From: Euprymna scolopes
Taxonomy: Eukaryota
Assembly (NCBI GenBank): GCA_053919585.1
Contig: CM132793.1
Strand: one strand, 5' to 3'
DNA length: 64,000 bases
Shown: positions 35,405-50,952 of the stretch, one piece after another
Layout of the letters: every line of letters begins with the position of its first letter
Numbering within the stretch: the first letter of the stretch is position 1
Notes under the pieces: model-generated
What the model was told of the DNA's origin: nothing
Seen by the model: only the letters and a program-made list of their open reading frames with translations
Databases searched by the model: none
Program-made: the position numbers and the translations under genes

Positions 35405-36230
35405 GAGACAACTCAATTCGAAATTGTAGTCAGCTAGAAAGCAGAAAAAACGGAAGACAATTCCACAGGCGTGCAGTTGCAGTACTGCAGTTCTAAGAAA
35501 GAACCTTTTTTTCATGGAATCTACGTTTAGGTTTAGGCACAAATAAAAAAGTGGGGGGGGGGGATTATTGATAGTGTTTTCAGTTAGACGAGTGTTTCTT
35601 GTGAAAGTTTGGTGAGGGGGGGGACAATAGATTGGAGCTCAGTCGAGCACTTGCCATGAAAATAATAATAAAGCAGAGACAAATTCGCAACATCTCTTCT
35701 GTGAGATAGAGATTGCAAGGAAGAGAAAAGGTCATATCCTACGAGGCTACAAAGTCTATTTTGAACTCTATCAAGGCAGGACAAGTCCTTTCTAGCAGCT
35801 CCTGCCCAAATGTGGCAACAGTACTCCATCCTTGGACATATCTGACTCTTATATAGATAGAGAATTGCATCAGCAGTGAGATATCTACTGGATCGATAGA
35901 AGGCCCCACCATTTTTCCAGCAGCCTTGGCAACAGATTTGATGTACGTGTTCTATTTCAGATCAGGAGTAAAGGTAAAGCCTAGAAGCTTGTCAAAACAT
36001 GAGGCCTCCCCAAGACGAGAGCCATTCATTTCAATTGATGCCAAATGGGGATCAGAGCGTTGATGATGTAAAGATAGAAGCTTGGTTTTAGATGCATTAA
36101 AAGTAACTAGCCACTCCTTTCCCCATTGTACCACGCGCTCAAGATCAGAGGAGAGAGAATCAGAGAGAACTTGGTCGTTTACGGTCTTAGATGTACTACC
36201 ATAGATGGTAGTGTCATCAGCATAAATAGA
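35405..36230 (-). mobile_element. CR1-group LINE 3' fragment
   Basis: IYADDTTIY, WLVTFNASKT, MEYCCHIWAGAARKDL. Confidence 0.88.
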
Positions 36231-36551: not shown

Positions 36552-38904
36552 AAGCGTAGAAATTTGGAATTCAAATAAAAACTATTTTCTGGGTAGACTT
36601 TCACCATTCTTTTTAATATGCGCATATATTGTCTTTAACTCTTTGCTTCCATGCGAGTCGTTTGTTCTATTACTTTATTTTTTATTTATTTATTCACTTT
36701 GTTTATTTATTTCTCTTTTTGCTTTTACCAACTGTATACCTTCTCTTTAAATGTATTTATTTAATGCATTTTAATTACATATGCGTAAAAATGGTCTCTA
36801 ACACTTAGTCCCACGCGAGCCGTTTTTATGGTCAGAAGAACTCTACTCGATAACGAATAGCCTATGCAAGAATATAGAAGAGCTAGGACCACCTTTCTTT
36901 CTACTATAGAAGACAGAAGAACTTTATTAAGTAGTATACTTAATATATGCAATCACCGTACGCTTGCTTGTATTTAAGTGTCCTCCATGATACCCATACC
37001 ATACCAAACCACTGCACGTTGCTCATAATTTGACTGACACTATATTTGTAACTGCAATATACATAATCCCAGCTGTGATACTAGGGCTAATTTTCTGAAT
37101 AGATGCAACACTCTGCGCCTGACCTTAATGACTACAATTCCAAATCCCAACGAACTAGCTGTCCCTATAACTGGGAGGGAAAAACCTAATAGCTAGCTAC
37201 GAAATCTTATACATTTTACCTCCAAGACGATTGCGTTTGTCTTACCTGCATGCATAAAAAAATAAAAAAAAAAAAAAAAAAAATTTCCTCCCTTCTTCAA
37301 ACTAAACCTTACCTGTAACTCAAAAATCCTAATGGAAATCCATCTGTAAATAAATAACCCCTCTTCTCTTGAACGCTAACAATCTACTCCTTCCAACCTA
37401 TCCGCCACTACACTCCCACATTGCTCCGCATCTGTAGTGGAATCGCTAACTTCCAGCCCCTAATCCCTCACATGCAAACTGATTTAATAGCCATCACTAA
37501 ACATCTATACATTTCTACCTCTAAGGCAGGCATTACAGCTCATTCCTATCCAGTAAGGGACTTAACAGCCTATGCACATAAAGGCAGGTACTTAACAGCC
37601 AAAGTACCCAGAAACAAAGCGATATGCACTACACAACTGTCTCCTCGAGTTTTGCAACGACTAATTACGTTATTGAAACGACACTCCTTGTTATGCAAAA
37701 CGCCCCATGACTCTTACTAAAAAATACCTACAACTTCAACTCTATTCGCACCTACTGAAAACCTGCCCATATATCTATTCACCTAATTACGCATGACTCA
37801 AAACTTGCTGTCTTATCCATGCTATATTGCCCTTACATCTTAACCCTCCTATCATCTAAAATAGCTCGGGCAAAACTCGTAGCTCAATTCTTAATACCTA
37901 CTCATACTGTAACACTATACTAGACCTAAGCTAACATTAATAAAATAAAAAAAAGGGTAAGACTAAAATCACATTATCTCCTCCCTAACAAGCCCTCTTA
38001 CAAACATAGACGCTTACACTGCATGAACTTCACCCCCCCCCCCTTTATCCATTAACAAGTAAATAGCATGTCCCTAAATCACTTTGAGGAGTGTAACTAA
38101 TCAGTAGAGATAAAATCCCTCACAAACTAACCCAGTAACACTAACAACGCGGGGTCGCAGAAATACCTGGATTAGAACCTAGGCGCGGAGAAAACCCTCT
38201 CAGGGCTGACGGACCCAGTAGGTCTTCCCAGATCATCCGTCTAGGAGAAGGAAAACTCTGAAACTAAACCAAAGGGGAGAGAGGCCTCTTCAGTCTTGGA
38301 TGACAACCTTCCTAGAGCTGGTGACTCAAACAAATTCACCGGTTTGCAAACCTAAATTGCTTAAGGAGTAGATAGGCTCTGTCTATCGCCCGGCTTCCAT
38401 ACTCCTTCTTTGCCTATTAGTCAAGCGCAGAGACACTATCTCAGTGATTCGACAGAAACACCCAGCGGTAGATCTTGTTTCCTGGCTAGGGCAATGAACG
38501 CCGTTCTTCCCCATTCCCAGCATGCCCCACCCCTAAAACTGAACATGTGGGAGTGCTTGAGTATAAGATATGCCTGAGCGATTAGATTGGGTTGACCTTC
38601 TTCTAAAGGGTTGAGGGTACCGGATTGACAGTTCCTGGCTGCTGTTCCCGACTGGTAGTACAGGAGCCCTAACTCTTTGGTAGCGCTTAGAGCGGCTGCT
38701 CCATCAACAGTTGAATAATATCGGGTTGTTTGCAGTGCCATGACGCGCATGGAAAGGGACCCTGCACTCATCCCCGGTGGGCTTTCCTGAGGCCACAATC
38801 CTAATTGGAGAAAGGTCAGCTGATGGTCTACTTGTGATGCATGTCTGAAGCTCCGCATAACCTCTTGTTTAGCTCCCCCTTACCGAAACTCTTAAAAAAA
38901 AAAT

Positions 38905-41817
38905 ATGACGACAGTACAATCTAAAAATAAGCTTAAACCAGGATTAGGGACAAACAAATTCAACTTGCCTCCTCCCTTGAGGCTCTCATTCACAAATATC
39001 CGTGGGCTTAGAACTAACTTAGCTGATGTTGAAGCATTTCTCTTAACAAATACCCCGGATATCTTAGCACTAAGTGAGACTAACCTACACTCCTCCATTC
39101 CCTCTAACCACTTTAACATGCCTGGATATCTCCCACTCTGCCGTAAGGACTCTGACAGACATATGCACGGACTTGGAGTTTACATTCGTAATACCCTTCC
39201 CTTGACTAGAGAAACAAACCTAGAAACAGATGATCAAGCCTTTATGTGCTTTAGACTAAACGTGCAACACAGTATTAGCTACTATTATTTTCTCTACCGC
39301 TCTCCCTCGACTCAGGACTGCTCCATAATAAACAAAGTATCTGACAGCATAGACACGGCACTGTCCCTCGACACTAGCGCACAAATACATGTGTTTGGTG
39401 ACTTTAATGTCCACCACAAAAACTGGCTTGGATTCTCTACTCACACAGATGCAGCGGGCAGCACAACCCATAGCTTCGCTATATCTCACTCCCTATCACA
39501 AATTGTTACGTTTCCAACCCGTTTCCCTGACCAGGAAGAACAACACGCATCACTTCTAGATCTGTTTTTGACCACAGTTCCCGATGACTGCATAACGAAG
39601 GTCCACAGCCCACTCGGGAACGCTGACCATGCAGTGATAATGGTTGAAATCGCCCTAAACTCTAGACCCAAAACTGAAGAGCCAGTGCTCAAAACAACGA
39701 GATATTATAATAAGGCTGACTGGGAAGCCATCAGGGAACTAATTAGAGATGCTCCATGGAAAAATATTTTCTCTCTCCCTGCTGAACAATGTGCAAACGA
39801 GACCACTGACTGGTTCAAAACTGCAATCGAAGCGCATGTTCACATGCGGAAATTTTATAGTAAGCCCCACTCTCCCCAATGGTTTACGTCGACTTGTGCA
39901 ACTGCCATTACTCAAAAGCAGCATGCATACCGTAGGTTTAACCGACATAAGTCCAGTTCAAACAGACTGAAATATATAGAAGCTAGAAATAACGTTAAGA
40001 AAGAAATAGCGACAGCTAAGAGAGAATTTACGGAAACCACTAAAAAGCGCATCGAAGCACAAAAACTAGGAACTCGAGACTTCTGGAAAATCTACAACAG
40101 TGTAGTAAATAATGGGCAATCAACAATTCCCCCACTAACCAACAATCACGAGGTTGTCTCCTCAGCAACCGACAAGGCTAACATGCTTGCCAGTCGGTTT
40201 GCCTCAAACTCCACACTGGACCCTTCCAACCACCCCCTACCTGACTTTCCTATGCGGACAGACGCCACACTAGACGATCTGAAAACCACCCCTGCTCAGG
40301 TGCATGCTATCATAAAAAACCTTGACACCTCAAAAGCATGTGGACCCGATCTTATCCCAGCTGTGCTATTAAAAAAGTGCTCAGCCGAAGTAGCTCCAGT
40401 TCTCTCCAAACTCTACAACAAATGTCTTAATGAAGCTTGCTTTCCGGGCTGTTGGAAAACTGCTTCTGTTGTACCAGTATTCAAGAATTCTGGCGAAAGG
40501 ACAGACCCATCAAATTATCGCCCCATTAGCCTCCTCCCACTTTTTGCCAAAATATTTGAGACCATAATTAACCATGCTCTAGTCCATCATCTTACAGATG
40601 CTAAACTACTGACTGACAAACAATATGGATTTAGACAAGCCCGTTCCACAGCAGACATCCTCACTGTGATCTCTGAACGTATATACCAATCACTGGACAA
40701 AGCGGGGGAAGGCAGAGCGGTAGCTCTAGATATATCTAAGGCTTTTGACAGGGTATGGCATGAGGGTCTCCTCAGTAAAATCAGATCATACGGTATCACT
40801 GGTAGAATACTTAACATAATTAAATCCTTCTTAGATAAGAGAAAAATCCAGGTAGTCCTTGACGGTCGCACATCTAAACAATATGATATAAATGCGGGAG
40901 TGCCCCAGGGTTCTATCCTTGGACCTCTATTGTTCCTGATATTCATAAATGACCTCCCCGACAACATTGCCTCTGAGATGGGTATATATGCTGATGACAC
41001 TACACTCTATGGCAGACACGACAGGAAGACGAATGAACACATTTCTAAAGAAATGGCAGAAACACTAGAGGAAGACCTCCAATCTGTAGTGGAATGGGGA
41101 CAAAAGTGGTTGGTCGCATTCAATGCTGCCAAGACTAAACTAGTTTCATTCAATAATTACAAGAAACCCTCTCTACCACCCATAGCAATGGCCAACGACT
41201 CTTTATCTGAGAGTCCATCTTTCAAACTCCTTGGCCTAACGTTCACAGGAAACATGAGTTGGAACAATTACATTGAAGGCATTGCCAGGGCCGCTGCAAG
41301 AAAGGTAGGCTCTCTCTACCGTGCTAGAAAACTACTAACACCCGAAAGTATCCTGTACCTCTATAAGGCCACCATGCGCCCATGTATGGAGTATTGCTGC
41401 CACATCTGGGCTGGTGCATCTGCTACTAGTCTCTCGCTCCTTGACAAGGTTCAAAAGAGAGTCGCAAACCTGATAGGCCCTGAACTGGCATCTAAGCTTC
41501 AGCCTCTGTCCCATCGACGAAATGTTGCATCCCTCTGCCTTTTCTACAAGTATTTTAGTGGTGAATGCTCTGACGAACTGCAATCACTTGTGCCCCCACG
41601 ACGCGAGCACCCTCGACAAACCCGACAGGCTACTAGATCCCACCCCCACACTGTAGAGGTCCCTAGATGTAAAAGATCTTTTTACTCCAATAGTTTCTTC
41701 CCCAGAACCGCAAGACTCTGGAATTCCATTCCAGGTCCCTGCTTCCCCAACAGTACTGACGTGCAGAAGTTCAAGTGTAACGTGAACCGACACCTTGCTG
41801 CCCAAATCCCTACATAG
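38905..41817 (+). CDS. Intact LINE ORF2: APE endonuclease plus reverse transcriptase, 970 aa
   Basis: NIRGL, LSET, YRSP, GDFNVH, LDLFLT and DH (APE). YRPISLL, LDISKAFDRV, GVPQGSILGPLLF and YADD (RT). No stops. Confidence 0.95.
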   Translation: MTTVQSKNKLKPGLGTNKFNLPPPLRLSFTNIRGLRTNLADVEAFLLTNTPDILALSETNLHSSIPSNHFNMPGYLPLCRKDSDRHMHGLGVYIRNTLPLTRETNLETDDQAFMCFRLNVQHSISYYYFLYRSPSTQDCSIINKVSDSIDTALSLDTSAQIHVFGDFNVHHKNWLGFSTHTDAAGSTTHSFAISHSLSQIVTFPTRFPDQEEQHASLLDLFLTTVPDDCITKVHSPLGNADHAVIMVEIALNSRPKTEEPVLKTTRYYNKADWEAIRELIRDAPWKNIFSLPAEQCANETTDWFKTAIEAHVHMRKFYSKPHSPQWFTSTCATAITQKQHAYRRFNRHKSSSNRLKYIEARNNVKKEIATAKREFTETTKKRIEAQKLGTRDFWKIYNSVVNNGQSTIPPLTNNHEVVSSATDKANMLASRFASNSTLDPSNHPLPDFPMRTDATLDDLKTTPAQVHAIIKNLDTSKACGPDLIPAVLLKKCSAEVAPVLSKLYNKCLNEACFPGCWKTASVVPVFKNSGERTDPSNYRPISLLPLFAKIFETIINHALVHHLTDAKLLTDKQYGFRQARSTADILTVISERIYQSLDKAGEGRAVALDISKAFDRVWHEGLLSKIRSYGITGRILNIIKSFLDKRKIQVVLDGRTSKQYDINAGVPQGSILGPLLFLIFINDLPDNIASEMGIYADDTTLYGRHDRKTNEHISKEMAETLEEDLQSVVEWGQKWLVAFNAAKTKLVSFNNYKKPSLPPIAMANDSLSESPSFKLLGLTFTGNMSWNNYIEGIARAAARKVGSLYRARKLLTPESILYLYKATMRPCMEYCCHIWAGASATSLSLLDKVQKRVANLIGPELASKLQPLSHRRNVASLCLFYKYFSGECSDELQSLVPPRREHPRQTRQATRSHPHTVEVPRCKRSFYSNSFFPRTARLWNSIPGPCFPNSTDVQKFKCNVNRHLAAQIPT

Positions 41818-43776
41818 TACCCCAGTAGTTGTTGCCCCTGATAGTAGCCCCCTACACCAAAGTGGCAATTTGCCTTGTTTGGGGTGAAAATGTAATAAAA
41901 AAAAAAAAAAAAAAAAAAAGGTACTTAAATTGTTGGTCGGTAATGACCATAAAGGTTCGCTCGGTCTCGGTTTTGAGGGACGGGTGTGTCCAAGTTCATT
42001 CATTAAAAATATTTAGCCCCTTGAGGTAAAACATGATTCTGAATCTGCAGTAACTGAATTTACAGTAGAAGGAGGCCCCTTCTTCTGCTATACATGCTCG
42101 ATTGCTAATGATGGAGCAACACCTATGTTGTGTTGCGACTCATGCAATAATTGGTATCATTTCAGTTGCGTTGGAGTTGACCAGCGGGACACCATAGGCA
42201 AGTGGGTTTGTCCAAGTTGTACAGACAAAAAATTCTTATATTACATTATCGGGGTCATCGACTTAATTAAAGTCATTTTCTCTTTATTATTTATGTAGCA
42301 ACCCCCCCCCCCCAATGAACTATACTCTCTGACGAATCAATGCTTCCCTGTAAGTTCTTCGGCCATAGACTGGCCAATCGACATGCAGGGCACATTGATC
42401 CTACTGTCCCCAAAAAGAGTGCAGGGGACATCCAACAGTCAGCACAGAGCTGCGAGCGAAGACACACCTTCTTCTCCTCCTCACCCAGCACCGACAGTCC
42501 GGCTTGGACCTGACTCAATAACTTCGAGCTCCACCACTATTATCCCGTTGAATAAATACTTGCAAATGTTTAATGTTAAAAGGAGTTTGTCGTTTTTATC
42601 GAGGGTTCTAAAAGATAAATAATTAGCTGGGGTACAACTACAAACAGTTGGTTTTAAATGTTTTGTAATTAATATAGCTCATTCTTTTTATTTATTTATT
42701 TTTATTATAGTTATAATTTTTATTATTATAATTAGATTTATTAAAAAAAGTTCTGTAAATATATTTTAAAAAAAAATGCACTCAGAAAGACACCCATTTA
42801 TTTAAGTATATTTTGTTGGCACTGTTTTACAATTTGTCATTGTTCTGAAGGAGACAACTCTCTTTAACTAAGAAATTAATTCATTTTTTCATCTCATAAT
42901 TTAGGACGCTTATAACGCTGTCAGTAAATTTTCACAAGCGGTTTACAAAAACATACTTTTATGTTTTTCATTCTTTTGTTTGTGGGAGGGGGGATATGAG
43001 GGGCATTCAATTATAGAACTTGTATAGAATCACCTGTGTCCGTAACAACAGTAAACAGAATTTTTGTGAAATATTAAAGGGTTCTTCTGCTCAGTTAATG
43101 TCGGCACGTTACTTATAAAAAAAAAAACGGTTAATTAAACTGCAGAAGCACCTGTTAAAAACTATACAAAGGAACTATGTTACATCTCCACGCATAGTGA
43201 TACAGCGTACAGATTGGAACGTTTAAGAACATCGGTATATAAGGATTTTCCACGAAATCAAATCAGTTCATTCCAGTTTCTCTCTTGTCTTCCCCAAGTC
43301 TGGATGTCAATGAAACTCTGCCACTGGAAGGCGTTAAAATCACATGTCTTGAATTTGCATGCCATACATATGTACCTAAATTCTCATCATGGAAAATTAC
43401 CACGTCGAACAAGAATTAATTCTTCTTTAAATAATGTTATTTTGAACTACTGTTTTCTTATGCAATGAACACACACACACATACACACATTTTGCTTACA
43501 TGGTTTAATGACTGTTTTTCTCTCATAAAATATTCACATTCATTTCAAGCCACGTGTAACACGCTGTTAATAAAAACCAGTAATTTTAAACTTCATGCTA
43601 TTCTCATGGGATCCTCATTTAGTTAATCCTGCATAATGAACACTCGTTGCGAGAAAACACTTACATTGGAACGATTTGAATTAATATTCCTAACACGTAA
43701 ATAAATGTTATTTCATATTAATAGAGTGATTTCGAGTTCTTTGTCAAGTGCCATTATTTTCTGGAGTTGTTTATGT

Positions 43777-46325: not shown

Positions 46326-47630
46326 CACCCTATGTTGTTCAGGATTCAAGAAGGAACACAATTTTTTTTTCTTCACAATTCTCATAAAATCATATCATTT
46401 TTTTTATTTTCTCCCTGCCTCCTGTTTTATATAAGAAATCTGGCCAGTGAGGGTTGAGGACATGCTTTGCTTGGAGATAAACATTATGGGTAGACATACA
46501 TATATTTGTATTTCATTTTCTTCACTTATATAGAAGAATTTTCTAATTCTGAAATATATGCATTTCATGTCGACTTTTAATTTCTTTCTTTTCTATACTT
46601 TTTGCTCTCATCAAGTACATTGTTTTCTGGGGTAGCTAAGTAGACTTTCTCTTTTGTAATCATATGTAGTTTTGCTGCAAATAATATTACATCTGAAAAC
46701 AGACGATTGAATATTTTACTGAGTGAATTCCTGGTTTCATTAACAATGTCTTATGATGAACCTCATTGTCAACTGAATACAGACATTAGTTAATAAGAAG
46801 CATTTGGTGGGTCAAATGCTAAGTCAACTGCTTCAATTAATGAGGGAGTTAGTTGAAGATGTACTTACTGATGGTATTTTTCTTTAGTAATTCTTTGTAT
46901 CACAGTTACTATCTAATATTCTTTGAACAATTGGCATTCTTAGCAGATAAAATTATGAGTTTTACTGGGACTTCCCTCCCTCAAATTCCGACTTCTAATT
47001 TTTGTAGCAGAGATCTCATCGTTTATCATAAATTCAACCCCAGACTCCAAGTTCACAAAAGGCTGTTGAGCAGCTTACAAAGGAGATAAAAAGTTTAAAG
47101 TTCGATAGGACCCAATCATCTAGTCAACTTAACTATGTCTTTCAGTCTCCTCAAAATTAGGTACTCTGGGTTGGAACAAAAATTAAAATTGCCTCCGTCT
47201 GAAAGCATTTCTCCTTAACTAATTCATTAGAATAATTTAGTTGACATCAGCATGAGAATCGTTTACAGAAAAAAAAATAATGACTAATAAAATGGGGAAA
47301 AACAGGAAACAAAAAGAAGTAAAACATTTTATTTAAAAAGATAAATTTTATTATAAAACTAACAAAGGATTTTGCCGAGTGGTAAAATATGCTTAAATAT
47401 TAGACTATTTTCAAATATCGTCCTAAATTGGGAATGGAGCAACGGACTATATAAGTAGATATTAATAAGTCCCTCTTACCTTTTTTTTTTTTTTTAAATG
47501 GAGAGTAGATAATGCACTGTGGATGTGTTATTGGCAGCTCCAGTAACTCCCTCTTCTCCTTTTTTGTTCCAGGTCGGTAGTACTTCATGAACAGTAGCCT
47601 GAGATGTCGAAAATTTTCTGTTTCTATATC

Positions 47631-50600
47631 TATCCTTGTGGCCATGTCACTAGTAAGGGTGCTGGAGGTAAATGTTTCATCTGGGCTGACGTTATCCACC
47701 TGATAGTCAGGGACCCGAACCTTGGATTAACCACTAAGGAGGCTGTCCTATCAGCAGGTGCAAAGTACTGGGGCTGCAGTATTGCCATTTAGTGAAAGGA
47801 TTCTGGACCATTCAGTGGTTTCTGGTGAGGCCTCTCGATGCCATACTAGTGGGTAATTGTTACGACTTTACCTGATCATGTGCTGCAAAAAGAAAAAAAA
47901 ATGTCCTGTCTTTTTCTCTCTTACTTTCTCTCTTTGTTCTGCTCTAACCAAGTCTTTCGACCTGTTCTGCAAATCCCAAAACCTCAACATGAAATATCTC
48001 CAGAAAAAAAACACGTATAAACCTAGAACCCCATCCTTCAATGTAGACCCCTAATACCATGTCTCCTTCTCCAACATCAGGGGTCTATGTTCTAATCTTC
48101 CAGAGGTTGAAACCCAATTACAAGAGTCGAAACCAGACATATTCTTTCTAAGCGAAATTGGCATAGGACTGACCACTTCCCTAGATGAGTTCATAATTAA
48201 AGGATACTCTAACTTAACATCTAAATCTGACCCCTAAGATCGCCATAGGCATGGAATATGTGCCTACATTAAAGATGGCTTTCCGTGTGGTAGGGATATC
48301 TCCAGAGAAGACCCTAATTTAGCTTATATGTGCTTCCGGGTTGCACTTGCTTACACCACCGCATTTATATTTGCCCTCTATCGCCCCCACAACAGGGGGT
48401 TACTATCTTAAAGAGTATATCTGAGAAAATCGACCATATCCAGTCTGCTCATCCTTCAGCTAACATTCACATTTGCGGTGACTTCAATGTCCATAATGCG
48501 GAATGGCTGACCCACTCAAATAAGACAGATGACGAGGGGAGGTTCTGTCATGATTTTGCCATTGCCTATAACCTTACTCAGATTGCTCACAAACCCACCC
48601 ATGTGGCCAATACTACCAGTCAGTGTGCAAGCCTTCTAGACCTTTTTCTCACAACTTCCCCTGAGCTATGTTCATGTTCTGTTCTTCTCTGGGATCCTCT
48701 GACCACTCAGTTGTATCACTTAAGATAAAAATGAAATGTAATAAGTCTTCAGACATACCTCTCCACCGTACTGTATATCGATACTCTATGGCTGACTGGG
48801 ATAGCTTCCGTACATTTATATCTGATCTACATCTGCATTCTATGTTTAAAAAGGATGTGTCCTCTATAGTATCAGACTTGACTGAATGGTTAATTGTAGA
48901 CATAGACAAATTCATACCATCCAAAAAATTCCAACAAAAACTAACAGCCAGCCATGGTTCTCCCCAGAATGTACTGCTGCCATCGCGCACAGAAATCACT
49001 TTTTCCATAGCTACCAACGTAATAGATGTACTGAGACTAAAGCTGCTTTCAGGACTGCCAGCAACCACTGTAAAAGAGTAATAAAAAATGCAATAGAGCT
49101 ATATGCTCAGTCCGTTAAATCCAAAGTAGCTGATCAGCGGCTCGGTTCCCACCAGTTTTGGCAAATAGTTAATAGGATCTTGAACAGAAGTGTGTGTTCT
49201 ATTCCAACCATCATCAATGGATCTGAGGTCATCTCGTCAGCATCAGACAAACCAACCTATTTGCCAAGAACTTTGCAGCTAACTCTACCCTATGCGACGA
49301 AGGCCATCAACTCCCCGTATTTCCTCCTATAACAGACAACATGCTATTCAACATAAAAATATCTGTGTATGAGATCGCCAAGCTAATCAAGAACCTTGAT
49401 TCCAGTAAAGCAATTGGTCCAGACGGCATTCCAATTATAGTGTTGAAAAAGCTTCGACCAGAAGTTGCCCCCATATTTACAAAACTGTTTAAGTGTTGCC
49501 TTAAGGAGAAATGCTTTCCAACACCCTGGAAAACCTCATCAGTATGCCCTGTATTTAAGAATTCAGGTGATAAGTAATCTCCCTCTCAGTACAGACCAAT
49601 AAGTCTCCTGTGTGTCATGAGTAAACTGCTGGAATCCATATTAAATAGAGAAGTAGTCAACCACCTCAGCAGAAATAATCTTCTTAGTGACATGCAATAT
49701 GGTTTCTGTTCTGCTAGATCTACAGCAGATGTGCTAACGGTTATATTTCATAGGATTAGTGAATCTCTTCGACAAAGGCTTCCTTTCTAGGGCAATTGCT
49801 CTTGACATATCAAAGGCCTTTGATAAGGTATGGCATAGGGGCCTACTTCACAAGATTTTCAGCTACGGTATAACTGGAAATGAGTTCTCAATTATTAAAT
49901 CCTTTCTCTCTGATAGGCTCATAAGAGTAACGGTTGATGGGCAGAAATCAGAGACCCCCAGTATTAATGCTGGAGTCCCTTAAGGGTCTATCCTGGGTTC
50001 AACTCTCTTCCTGATCTACATCAATGATCTCCCAAAACACATACTTAAATCATTCGTTGACATCTATGCTGATGACATGACCATCTATGGCAACACATCA
50101 AAAGCCGTAAATTGGCATCAATTGAAATGGATGGCTCTCGTCTTGGGGAGGCTCCATGTTTTGACAAGCTTCTGGGCTTGACCTTTACTTCTGATCTGAA
50201 ATGGAACACGTACATCAAGTCTGTTGCCAAGGTTGCTGGGAAGATGGTGGGATCTTTCTACCGCTCCAGAAGATATCTCACTACTTATGCAATTCTCTAT
50301 CTTTATAAAAGCCAAGTACCTCCAAGGATGGAGTACTGCTGCCACGTCTGGGCAGGAGCTGCTAAAAACAGCCTATCCTGCCTTGACAGAGTACAAAATA
50401 GACTTCGTGGTCTAGTGGGGGAGGCCCTTTTCTCTTCCCTGCAACCTCTCTCCCAAAGAAGAGACGTTGTGAGCCTGTCTTTGTTTTATCGTTATTTCCA
50501 TGGCAAGTGTTCGTCTGAGCTCCAATCTCTGGTCTCCCTCACCACTTCCCTAGATGAGTTCATAATTAAAGGATACTCTAACTTAACATCTAAATCTGAC

Positions 50601-50952
50601 CCCTAAGTTCATAATACACCCGTCTAGTTGAAGCCACTGTCATTAATTTTCCCCACTCTTTATCTGTGCCTAAATCAAAGCGTAGATTCCATGAACAAAG
50701 CTTCTTTCTTAGAAGTGCACGACTGTGGAACTCTCTTCCGTTTGCCTGTTTCCTACCTGACTACAACTTGGATATCTTCAAGTCCAACATAAACAAATTC
50801 CTGATGAACCGCTCCTTTAAGTAAGACACTTTATCAAATCTCCAATACTAACGATTACTAAGATACTATCACATTGATTACTGTACACACAATAACCCTC
50901 ATCCCCGAGTGGTTTCCGGGCCTTGATAAGTGGTGACCTCCATGTAAAAAAA
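47631..50952 (+). mobile_element. Near full-length decayed CR1-group LINE (leader, APE, RT, 3' UTR, A-tail)
   Basis: NIRGLCSNL, GDFNVHN, GPDGIP, LDISKAFDKV and MEYCCHVWAGA spread over many frameshifted ORFs. Deletion of about 120 bp near 50112. Confidence 0.9.

What the first reader, a model, noticed from the sequence alone, without database searches (positions are those of the whole stretch)
38635..38735. Covarying RNA structure shared by the leaders of two divergent CR1-group LINE subfamilies
Seen: 38649-38713 and 47697-47760 each lie about 190-230 nt before their ORF start and fold the same way with different sequence. Outer stem CGACTG/CAGTTG versus CACCTG/CAGGTG; a TAGT(A)CA bulge; stem GGAGC/GCTCC versus GGGAC/GTCCT; an invariant CC/GG pair with a CT bulge; an NAA loop; inner stem CTCT/AGAG versus CCTT/AAGG. 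Both are preceded by CTGG(G)CTG..GTT and followed by a GGG-containing segment that can form a small hairpin. By eye it does not fit the hammerhead, HDV, twister or pistol consensus. Inference: a conserved cis-acting RNA, such as an IRES-like element for ORF2 translation, an RT-binding signal or an unclassified ribozyme.
Basis: partly seen in the sequence, partly recalled or inferred. Interest (0 to 1): 0.7.

Follow-up and report, generated by a model that had tools for sequence, protein, structure and literature searches.

The report
Conserved multi-hairpin leader RNA of LINEs
The flagged hairpin is real and is one part of a roughly 190-290-base, three-to-four-hairpin RNA module that a deep lineage of single-gene jumping elements (LINEs) of marine invertebrates keeps just upstream of its gene; it matches no catalogued RNA family and its job, most likely helping the gene to be translated, is untested.

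Summary
It is part of a larger conserved module: a boundary motif, a small hairpin H0, H1, a linker, a long hairpin H2 with an inner hairpin, a tail motif, and in most relatives a tetraloop-capped hairpin H3.

I found the module in 12 elements. Two are in the window. Ten come from public (mostly marine) metagenome contigs whose LINE proteins are only 38-57% identical to copy A. On these 12, 38 base pairs are 92.5% paired against 36-48% in shifted controls. 25 pairs show compensatory changes, and 0 of 500 shuffles reach any observed measure.

No Rfam family matches. The HDV-like, hammerhead and twister signatures are absent. The region is not coding.

The host elements have one ORF (endonuclease plus reverse transcriptase), no ORF1, a poly(A) tail and repeated units at the 5' end, as published for Zenon-like CR1-group elements. 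The module lies inside the leader, about 100-190 nt before the ATG.

I rate a structured RNA under selection at about 95%. The function is inferred only: cap-independent or shunt-like translation (about 40%), a protein-binding RNP signal (about 25%), an export or stability element (about 15%), or a ribozyme (under 10%).

The parts
36616..41920 (+). LINE copy A: 2.29-kb leader, single ORF, short 3' UTR and poly(A) tail. Its 5' end is cut within a roughly 550-bp repeated leader unit.
   Evidence: Copies in the same genome are 98-99% identical and have variable 5' ends. Homology to longer copies starts at 36616, and L048 carries about 5 tandem units roughly 552 bp apart. The poly(A) run is visible.
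38613..38620 (+). 5' boundary motif GAGGGUAC (GGAGGUAA in B-type elements). Conservation between families begins here.
   Evidence: Upstream alignments of 10 elements; G.UA is invariant in alignment A5.
38627..38646 (+). Hairpin H0 (GACAG / loop UUCCUGGCUG / CUGUU). Rated probable.
   Evidence: Read by eye. The same position has GGCAG/CUGCU (L079), CUCAG/CUGAG (L084, L119), CACUUG/CAAGUG (L085) and CGCAU/AUGCG (L121). Not tested with the pair-count tool.
38649..38713 (+). It has an outer stem of 6 bp, an internal loop with invariant UAGU, a middle stem of 5+2 bp with a CU bulge, an inner stem of 4 bp and a 12-nt loop.
   Evidence: Helices 1-3 are 93-96% paired over 12 sequences, and 11 of their 18 pairs show changes on both sides.
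38714..38719 (+). Linker AAUAAU between H1 and H2, mostly conserved.
   Evidence: Alignment A7.
38720..38778 (+). Hairpin H2. A long interrupted stem (AUCGGG..UGCAG with CUGCA..CCCGGU) encloses inner hairpin H2b (CCAUG-ACGCG-CAUGG, 38738-38752) and a conserved unpaired G.CC stretch.
   Evidence: RNAalifold on MAFFT alignments. Pair counts: helix 4 has 15 pairs, 12 of them with double changes; helix 5 is 95% paired. The MFE fold of copy A reproduces it.
38789..38796 (+). 3' tail motif GAGGCCAC (GAUGCCA in B-type elements).
   Evidence: GA.GCC is invariant in A6. The pattern scan that used this motif recovered new true instances.
38799..38904 (+). Variable spacer that ends in a pyrimidine tract and then an A run before the ATG. 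It contains 3 upstream ATGs.
38905..41817 (+). Single intact ORF of 970 aa: apurinic-type endonuclease plus reverse transcriptase.
   Evidence: Pfam PF03372, PF14529 and PF00078.
41896..41920 (+). Poly(A) tail of copy A, preceded by AAUAAA.
   Evidence: RNA- and DNA-run contig depth stops near here.
47484..50950 (+). LINE copy B: an older, degraded family whose copies are about 84-94% alike. The 3' limit is approximate.
   Evidence: At least 14 of 29 copies share the 5' end that corresponds to about 47484.
47656..47846 (+). Module of copy B: boundary motif AGGGUGCUGGAGGUA, H0, H1 (47697-47760), H2 (47767-47826) and tail GAUGCCA (47837-47843).
   Evidence: Model R2 gives 134.9 bits at 47697-47846. 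Within the family, variation per column is 0.010-0.024 at 47712-47811 and 47837-47861 (0.041 at 47812-47836), against 0.086-0.153 at the 5' end and 0.074-0.345 downstream.
47851..47872 (+). Hairpin H3 of copy B (GGGUAAUUGU-UACG-ACUUUACC). It is present in 9 of 12 elements and missing in A, L079 and probably L122.
   Evidence: 82.5% paired against 35-50% in shifted controls, with 20 cells changed on both sides.

Best explanation
This is a conserved cis-acting structured RNA module in the 5' leader of a deep lineage of ORF1-less, poly(A)-tailed CR1-group (Zenon-like) LINEs. On the sense RNA it folds into hairpins H0, H1, H2 (with inner hairpin H2b) and usually H3. Invariant unpaired nucleotides sit in the loops and bulges: UAGU, the GGCUG bulge, UGCCA and GA(G/U)GCCA.

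The module lies downstream of a fast-changing, ATG-rich, repeat-bearing promoter and leader region. It sits about 100-190 nt upstream of the single ORF, followed by a pyrimidine-rich and then A-rich unstructured spacer.

The most likely role is to let ribosomes reach the ORF start without scanning the whole leader, by internal recruitment or a shunt. The conserved loops would then contact a conserved host component such as the small ribosomal subunit or an initiation factor.

Shown here: the structure, its covariation, its position, its depth in the LINE tree and its reduced variation. Inferred only: any function.
For: Structure:
- On 12 elements, 38 pairs are 92.5% paired against 36-48% in shifted controls.
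- 25 pairs and 82 cells show changes on both sides.
- 0 of 500 shuffles reach any of the five measures.
- RNAalifold on plain MAFFT alignments gives the same H1 and H2 independently.

Breadth:
- H1 or the whole module was found upstream of the ORF in L079, L080, L081, L084, L085, L086, L108, L121 and L122, and upstream of a broken or run-off ORF in L119.
- The proteins of these elements, where an intact ORF was measured, are only 38-57% identical to copy A.
- Module carriers sit on both sides of the deepest split of the ORF tree.

Selection:
- Inside family B, variation per column is 0.010-0.024 across most of the core (0.041 in one 25-nt bin).
- The flanks show 0.086-0.153 at the 5' end and 0.074-0.345 downstream.
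- The family consensus repairs a mismatch in H2b.

Context that favours translation:
- The leader of copy A has 33 ATGs in 2,289 nt, so it shows no depletion.
- The distance from module to ATG is similar in 8 elements (95-187 nt).
- A pyrimidine-rich and then A-rich run precedes the ATG.
- There is no ORF1.
- Loop and bulge nucleotides stay invariant while the element's own protein has diverged to 38% identity. That fits a conserved host partner better than the element's own protein (inference).

Precedent: structured 5' RNAs of non-LTR elements that allow translation of the downstream ORF are known, namely HDV-like ribozymes and the twister variants of Perere-3 (PMC8501958).
Against: - No functional data of any kind exist for this module.
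- The spacer between module and ATG holds 0-4 upstream ATGs. A land-and-scan mechanism would therefore meet decoys.
- Single-sequence folding energy is not better than shuffled sequence.
- One close relative with an intact ORF (L082) has the module and spacer deleted. Either the module is dispensable for keeping an ORF open or that copy is dead.
- Non-autonomous derivatives of Zenon in Lepidoptera keep the 5' UTR although they need no translation (PMC6740152). That points to a promoter or RNP role for Zenon leaders in general.
- The RNA runs were available only as assembled contigs. Transcript starts, cleavage and splicing could not be read.
Confidence: 0.4

Rival explanations
1. Protein-binding RNP signal. 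The module would be the 5' binding platform for the element's own ORF protein, or for a host chaperone. It would give cis-preference, or position a second protein subunit for second-strand steps. In this it would stand in for the missing ORF1 protein, as the 5' RNA pseudoknot does in R2 elements.
For: - The elements have one ORF and no ORF1.
- The module is a multi-helix RNA with invariant loop and bulge nucleotides.
- R2 elements, which are also single-ORF, bind a structured 5' RNA (background knowledge; R2 papers are listed).
- Zenon-derived internally deleted elements keep the 5' UTR (PMC6740152).
Against: - Sequence-specific loops stay invariant while the protein diverges to 38% identity, and no co-variation with the protein was seen.
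- APE-type CR1-group LINEs are known to recognise their 3' end, and a conserved 3' hairpin is present in these elements.
- L082 lacks the module.
Confidence: 0.25
2. Nuclear export, stability or anti-silencing element. The hairpins would recruit a host export or protective factor to an intronless, long-leader transcript, like the constitutive transport elements of simple retroviruses.
For: - The transcript is intronless and polyadenylated.
- The module region is present in contigs of poly(A)-selected RNA libraries.
- The internal-loop motifs are conserved in extended hairpins.
Against: - There is no sequence or structural match to any catalogued transport element.
- The constant position just upstream of the ATG is not required for such a role.
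Confidence: 0.15
3. Self-cleaving ribozyme, either a diverged HDV-like form or a new class. It would process the 5' end of the LINE RNA, as in R2, RTE, L1Tc and Perere-3.
For: - Ribozymes at LINE 5' ends are common, and some promote translation (PMC8501958; papers).
- The RNA is complex and has invariant unpaired nucleotides.
- Earlier notes of this scan report HDV-like folds in RTE LINEs of the same genome.
Against: - Genomic copies of family A carry up to 2 kb of leader 5' of the module, and copies of family B carry 210-270 nt, with no pile-up of 5' ends at the module.
- No ribozyme model of Rfam scores at E up to 10 on eight leaders.
- H1 begins with an invariant C-G pair, not the G-U of HDV P1.
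- The column-pair scan found no clear crossing helix beyond short, weakly varying matches.
- The hammerhead and twister core motifs are absent.
Confidence: 0.07
4. DNA-level promoter or enhancer element only. The conservation would reflect transcription-factor sites, and the RNA pairing would be incidental.
For: - The module lies in the 5' region, where LINE internal promoters sit.
- Initiator-like CAGTT/TCAGTT occurs in H0 of several A-type elements.
Against: - 25 of 38 pairs change on both sides while keeping pairing, which DNA-site conservation does not produce.
- The stems differ completely in sequence between lineages, while loops and bulges are kept.
Confidence: 0.05

Closest known systems
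HDV-like ribozymes at the 5' end of R2, RTE, Baggins and L1Tc non-LTR retrotransposons
   Same: Both are conserved structured RNAs on the sense strand upstream of the ORF of single-ORF or ORF1-poor LINEs. The HDV-like ribozymes are reported to aid translation of the downstream ORF.
   Different: This module has no nested double pseudoknot and no Rfam hit. It is internal to the leader rather than at the element's first nucleotide. At about 190-290 nt with 3-4 independent hairpins, it is also much larger.
Twister-variant ribozymes of Perere-3 LINEs in Schistosoma mansoni (PMC8501958)
   Same: Both are structured RNAs of a LINE leader in a lophotrochozoan. In Perere-3, cleavage was sufficient for translation of a downstream reporter.
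   Different: The twister signature segments listed in that paper (GUCCCAAGC, CCGG, GUAAA, GGAG, GAGGG in order) are absent, and there is no twister Rfam hit. The Perere-3 ribozyme sits at the element's 5' end next to the target-site duplication.
R2 5' UTR pseudoknot / 5' protein-binding RNA
   Same: Both are conserved multi-helix 5' RNAs in LINEs that lack ORF1. This is a plausible functional analogue.
   Different: The LINE clades differ (restriction-like endonuclease in R2, APE-type here). There is no sequence similarity, and binding has not been tested.
Viral and retroelement IRESs and shunt structures (picornavirus and HCV-like IRESs, the mouse L1 inter-ORF region, pararetrovirus leader hairpins; PMC5902531)
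   Same: All combine a long ATG-rich leader, a multi-domain structure, and a pyrimidine-rich spacer placed before the authentic ATG.
   Different: No IRES family of Rfam matches. The spacer contains upstream ATGs. No ribosome-binding data exist.
ORF1(-) CR1-group elements with 5' repeated subunits; Zenon (PMC13343379, PMC6740152)
   Same: The host elements fit the published description: a single APE plus RT ORF, no ORF1, a poly(A) tail and repeated units near the 5' UTR.
   Different: In the text I searched or read, neither paper mentions a conserved RNA structure in the leader. Membership of these mollusc and marine elements in Zenon proper was not tested phylogenetically against reference Zenon sequences.

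Membership tests
HDV-like self-cleaving ribozyme | Match to the covariance models of the family (HDV, CPEB3 and the drz-type models in Rfam) | tested here: not met
   cmscan at E up to 10 on both window leaders and at E up to 5 on six relatives gave no ribozyme hit.
HDV-like self-cleaving ribozyme | Nested double pseudoknot (P1 crossing P2, plus P1.1), with cleavage 5' of a G that forms a G-U pair closing P1 | tested here: not met
   H1 and H2 are separate, non-crossing hairpins. The first pair of H1 is an invariant C-G. The column-pair scan found no convincing crossing helix with covariation.
HDV-like self-cleaving ribozyme | Self-cleavage activity | not testable with these tools
   Only assembled contigs of RNA runs were available, so RNA ends could not be read.
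Hammerhead ribozyme | Three-way junction with conserved core CUGANGA ... GAAA ... UH | tested here: not met
   The nearest strings are CUGAUAG (B-type) and CUGGUAG (A-type), which are not conserved as CUGANGA. No Rfam hammerhead hit.
Twister / twister-variant ribozyme | Conserved loop and stem segments (L4 GUCCCAAGC, P4 CCGG, L2 GUAAA, L1 GAGGG) with two pseudoknots | tested here: not met
   The segments listed in PMC8501958 are absent from alignments A7 and A8. No Rfam twister hit.
Any Rfam 15 family (IRES, tRNA, 5S rRNA, snRNA, riboswitch and others) | Score near the family's gathering threshold | tested here: not met
   The best hits within the searched stretches are unrelated families at 12-22 bits with E 0.065-5, and none overlaps the module core.
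IRES (functional class) | Cap-independent initiation on the downstream ORF in a controlled bicistronic or circular-RNA assay | not testable with these tools
   Only context is available: an ATG-rich 2.3-kb leader, a fixed distance to the ATG, and a pyrimidine-rich then A-rich spacer.
CR1-group, Zenon-like ORF1(-) LINE (the host element) | Single APE plus RT ORF and no ORF1 | tested here: met
   The 970-aa ORF carries PF03372, PF14529 and PF00078. No other ORF of 100 aa or more starting with ATG lies on the + strand of the 2.3-kb leader.
CR1-group, Zenon-like ORF1(-) LINE (the host element) | Poly(A) tail, stated in PMC13343379 to be unique to Zenon among CR1-group elements | tested here: met
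   Copy A has an A25 run after AAUAAA at 41896-41920. A runs of 8-22 follow the 3' UTR in L079, L084, L085, L086, L108, L082 and L083.
CR1-group, Zenon-like ORF1(-) LINE (the host element) | Placement of the reverse transcriptase inside the Zenon clade in a tree with reference sequences | not tested
   No reference Zenon or CR1 proteins were on hand. The assignment rests on architecture only.

The most novel reading that the evidence does not exclude
The module would be a new class of catalytic or ribosome-binding RNA. One version is an unclassified self-cleaving ribozyme. The other is a compact animal-retrotransposon IRES with a defined, deeply conserved fold. Either would replace the ORF1 protein's role in ORF1-less CR1-group LINEs. 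If so, these hugely abundant elements of cephalopod genomes would depend on an RNA machine that nobody has described.
Probability: 0.08. Interest if true: 0.9.

Novelty: new variant of a known kind. Interest (0 to 1): 0.62.

Why it matters
Structured 5' RNAs are known for only a few LINE clades: R2, RTE, L1Tc and Perere-3. How ORF1-less CR1-group elements express and package themselves is unknown, although they dominate many animal genomes.

This family has at least thousands of copies of leader A that are about 99% identical in a 5.9-Gb cephalopod genome. Here a defined RNA fold with strong covariation is kept across elements whose proteins have drifted to 38% identity.

That gives a concrete, mutable target for testing translation, RNP assembly or cleavage. 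It also offers a candidate new Rfam family, and a marker for telling full-length, potentially active copies from truncated ones.

Tried and rejected
- **Rfam on eight leaders:** nothing found.
- **Threading the HDV-like, hammerhead, twister and pistol topologies by eye:** none fits.
- **tRNA or 5S rRNA origin:** short look-alike strings (UUGGUAG; GGGUGCUG.AGG) were recalled from memory. Their order is wrong and no Rfam hit supports them, so I dropped this.
- **Kissing interaction between the H1 loop and the H2b loop:** the A-type pairing GCG:CGC, L085 AUG:CAU and L081 GCGA:UCGC look compensatory. However, L080 breaks it and B-type elements need another register. Inconclusive.
- **H1 loop pairing with the H3 region (GUAGC:GCUAC):** this conflicts with the H3 stem and is absent in A.
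- **Upstream GAGGGU pairing with the 5' strand of the inner stem as an alternative fold:** it is possible in 9 of 10 elements, but swapped type combinations pair almost as well. Not convincing.
- **Antisense ORF 38436-38858 (140 aa):** most relatives have stops in every frame, and 1-nt indels occur between relatives. It is an accident.
- **Conserved GGUA as a splice donor with the pyrimidine tract as acceptor:** no GT..AG joint crosses the module in RNA contigs, and L085 has GAUA. Unsupported.
- **My first reading that family B starts at 47567:** this was wrong. That position is an indel breakpoint, and the shared 5' end is about 47484.
- **Target-site duplications on metagenome contigs, to fix element 5' ends:** none found.
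- **RNA evidence:** all runs were contigs, so starts, ends and levels could not be read.
- **Viral-contig scan:** 0 hits.
- **Full-text search for two conserved motif strings:** 0 papers.
Full report
**What is at the coordinates**

- Aligned alone, the two differ by one 1-nt gap in the 5' bulge.
- All 17 proposed pairs form in both copies. Five pairs changed on both sides and two on one side.
- Sliding the 3' partners by 1-3 columns drops pairing to 35-64%, with 0-1 compensatory pairs.
- A covariance model of the hairpin (R1) finds only these two sites in the 64-kb window, at 88 and 85 bits. The next hit has E 2.8.
- Single-sequence folding energies are not better than shuffles, so the case rests on comparison.

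**The host elements**

Copy A has one intact 970-aa ORF (38905-41817) with endonuclease and reverse-transcriptase domains.
- No ORF1 lies in the 2.3 kb upstream, and a poly(A) tail sits at 41896-41920.
- The window lies in a 5.9-Gb genome. The top-scoring copies of this leader are 99-100% identical over the 701-nt query and 98-99% over 3.7-kb loci, out of 1,847 first-look candidates.
- Their 5' ends are variably truncated. The longest copies run into tandem leader units spaced about 552 bp apart.
- Family B is older, with copies about 84-94% alike.
- Most B copies share one 5' end, equivalent to about window 47484, and one subfamily carries an extra unit of about 145 nt. My earlier reading of 47567 as the 5' end was an indel breakpoint.
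- The architecture (no ORF1, poly(A) tail, repeated 5' subunits) matches what PMC13343379 describes for ORF1(-) CR1-group elements, and for Zenon in particular.
- Earlier notes of this scan call the genome a cephalopod. One protein hit is from a cuttlefish.

**Relatives from elsewhere**

I therefore took LINE proteins 38-57% identical to copy A and fetched the public contigs that encode them.
- R1 found the hairpin 180-290 nt upstream of the ORF in L079, L084, L085, L086, L081 and L080.
- RNAalifold on plain MAFFT alignments recovered H1. It also found a second long hairpin, H2, with an inner hairpin, and many compensatory pairs.
- I built a second model, R2, covering H1, H2 and the tail.
- A pattern scan of JGI metagenome contigs constrained only the inner H2 hairpin and the tail motif. 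It returned 34 loci, three of them true: L108 with an intact 972-aa ORF 115 nt downstream, L119, and a partial L089.
- Two more contigs carried the module: L121 (protein 46% identical) and L122 (38%).

**Strength of the structure**

On the model-based alignment of 12 instances (A8):
- 38 pairs are 92.5% paired, against 36-48% when slid.
- 25 pairs and 82 cells changed on both sides.
- 0 of 500 shuffles reach any of the five measures. That includes the two measures that the tool's own trials found robust to relatedness.
- The alignment is fitted to the model, which favours it. However, the same helices came from unfitted alignments and from MFE folds of A and L108.
- H3 is a stem of about 9 bp capped mostly by UACG. 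It is present in 9 of 12 elements, with 82.5% pairing against 35-50% slid. It is missing in A and L079.
- H0, just 5' of H1, has different stem sequences at the same place in every lineage. I only read it by eye.
- Invariant or near-invariant unpaired positions are UAGU (H1 internal loop), the GGCUG region with its CU bulge, CA (3' internal loop), UGCCA and GG of the inner H2 hairpin, G.CC in the H2 junction, and GA(G/U)GCCA in the tail.

**Selection and history**

- Within family B, variation per column is 0.010-0.024 over 47712-47811 and 47837-47861, and 0.041 at 47812-47836. It is 0.086-0.153 in the first 45 nt compared and 0.074-0.345 in the spacer.
- Subfamily-diagnostic variants cluster in the flanks. 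The family consensus restores an A-U pair that the window copy lost.
- In a maximum-likelihood tree of the 12 ORFs, all forks are supported, and module carriers lie on both sides of the deepest split.
- The two contigs without a hit are nested among carriers. L082 is sister to L085 and has a deletion that removes the module and spacer while keeping upstream leader homology. L083 is sister to L122, and its leader has rearranged look-alike motifs that R2 does not score.
- The module is therefore ancestral to this LINE lineage.

**What it is not**

- No Rfam 15 family matches any of eight leaders at permissive thresholds.
- The HDV-like, hammerhead and twister defining features are absent.
- It is not coding. 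Most relatives have stops in all six frames, and the 140-aa antisense ORF in A is not conserved.
- Two conserved 14-16-nt strings occur in no paper of the searchable library.
- The CR1-group and Zenon papers I searched or read do not describe a leader structure.

**Position and context**

- The module is internal to the leader. It is preceded by about 2 kb in A, 210-270 nt in B and at least 220 nt in the L085/L082 lineage.
- The tail motif lies 95-187 nt before the ATG in eight elements.
- The spacer turns pyrimidine-rich and then A-rich just before the ATG, but it holds 0-4 ATGs.
- The full leader of A has 33 ATGs, close to chance expectation.
- Contigs from poly(A)-selected RNA libraries of mollusc samples contain the region. 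Because only contigs were available, they show neither transcript ends nor splicing. No GT..AG joint spans the module.

**Interpretation**

The structural claim is solid (about 95%). The function is inferred.
- I favour a role in getting ribosomes to the single ORF past a long, ATG-rich, rapidly replaced leader, by internal entry or shunting (about 40%). The reasons are the fixed position before the ATG, the leader's make-up, the invariance of the loops despite protein divergence, and precedents in other LINE clades (PMC8501958 and the HDV-like literature).
- A protein-binding RNP signal analogous to the R2 5' RNA is the main rival (about 25%).
- An export or stability element comes next (about 15%).
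- A ribozyme is unlikely (about 7%), because copies retain long sequences 5' of the module and no catalytic signature is present.
- A purely DNA-level promoter element is contradicted by the compensatory changes.

**Verdict**

This is a real, previously uncatalogued structured RNA family of LINE leaders. It is a new variant of a known kind, namely cis-acting 5' RNAs of non-LTR retrotransposons. I score interest at about 0.6.

Noticed in passing
window 36616-36919 and locus L048 (units starting near 410, 965, 1510, 2067, 2617): Full-length copies of family A carry a tandem array of about 552-bp units at the 5' end of the leader, like the promoter monomers of mouse L1. The window copy starts inside one unit. 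Family B shows short units of about 145 nt at its 5' end.
   Followed up: partly
window 41830-41895; L079 3585-3643; L084, L085, L108, L082 just before their A runs: The 3' UTRs share a short hairpin (for example GGCAAUUUGCC, GGCAGCUUGCUGCC) followed by CCUUG...GGGGUGAA before the poly(A). This is probably the reverse-transcriptase recognition stem-loop of the lineage.
   Followed up: no
window 35423-36227 (minus strand): The 3' part of a different LINE (RT C-terminus with MEYCCHIWAG on the minus strand) lies directly upstream of copy A. It belongs to a very abundant family, with 11,750 first-look candidates about 90% alike.
   Followed up: no
window around 38338: Contigs of one run (X1, 49 records) switch to a different upstream sequence at 38338, and depth rises about tenfold between 37958-38151 and 38152-38345. 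Sister subfamilies therefore appear to share the core from about 38340 onward but have another 5' leader.
   Followed up: partly
L083 330-572: This is the leader of a module-negative relative. It contains look-alike pieces in another order (GGUAUCGAUGCCAGUG, GGUAUUGCCGUGG, ACAGGAUCCCUAAC) and folds stably (-77 kcal/mol over 246 nt). It may be a rearranged version of the module.
   Followed up: partly
L083 70-111 and L122 516-558: A further conserved hairpin (GGUGGUA...UACCACC) lies about 200 nt upstream of the module in the deepest-branching pair of elements.
   Followed up: no
L082 744-1121: The 125-aa ORF upstream of the module-deleted LINE reads like part of an LTR-retrotransposon polymerase (…SSWAHPMVSVPKPNGQ…). 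The contig is therefore likely a LINE copy next to or inside another element. Pfam gave no significant hit.
   Followed up: partly
window 38613-38618 versus 38672-38677; 47664-47669 versus 47720-47725: The upstream purine motif (AGGGU in A-type, GAGGU in B-type) can pair with the 5' strand of the inner H1 stem (ACUCU, ACCUU). That would compete with the inner stem and could form an alternative fold. The statistics are not convincing.
   Followed up: partly
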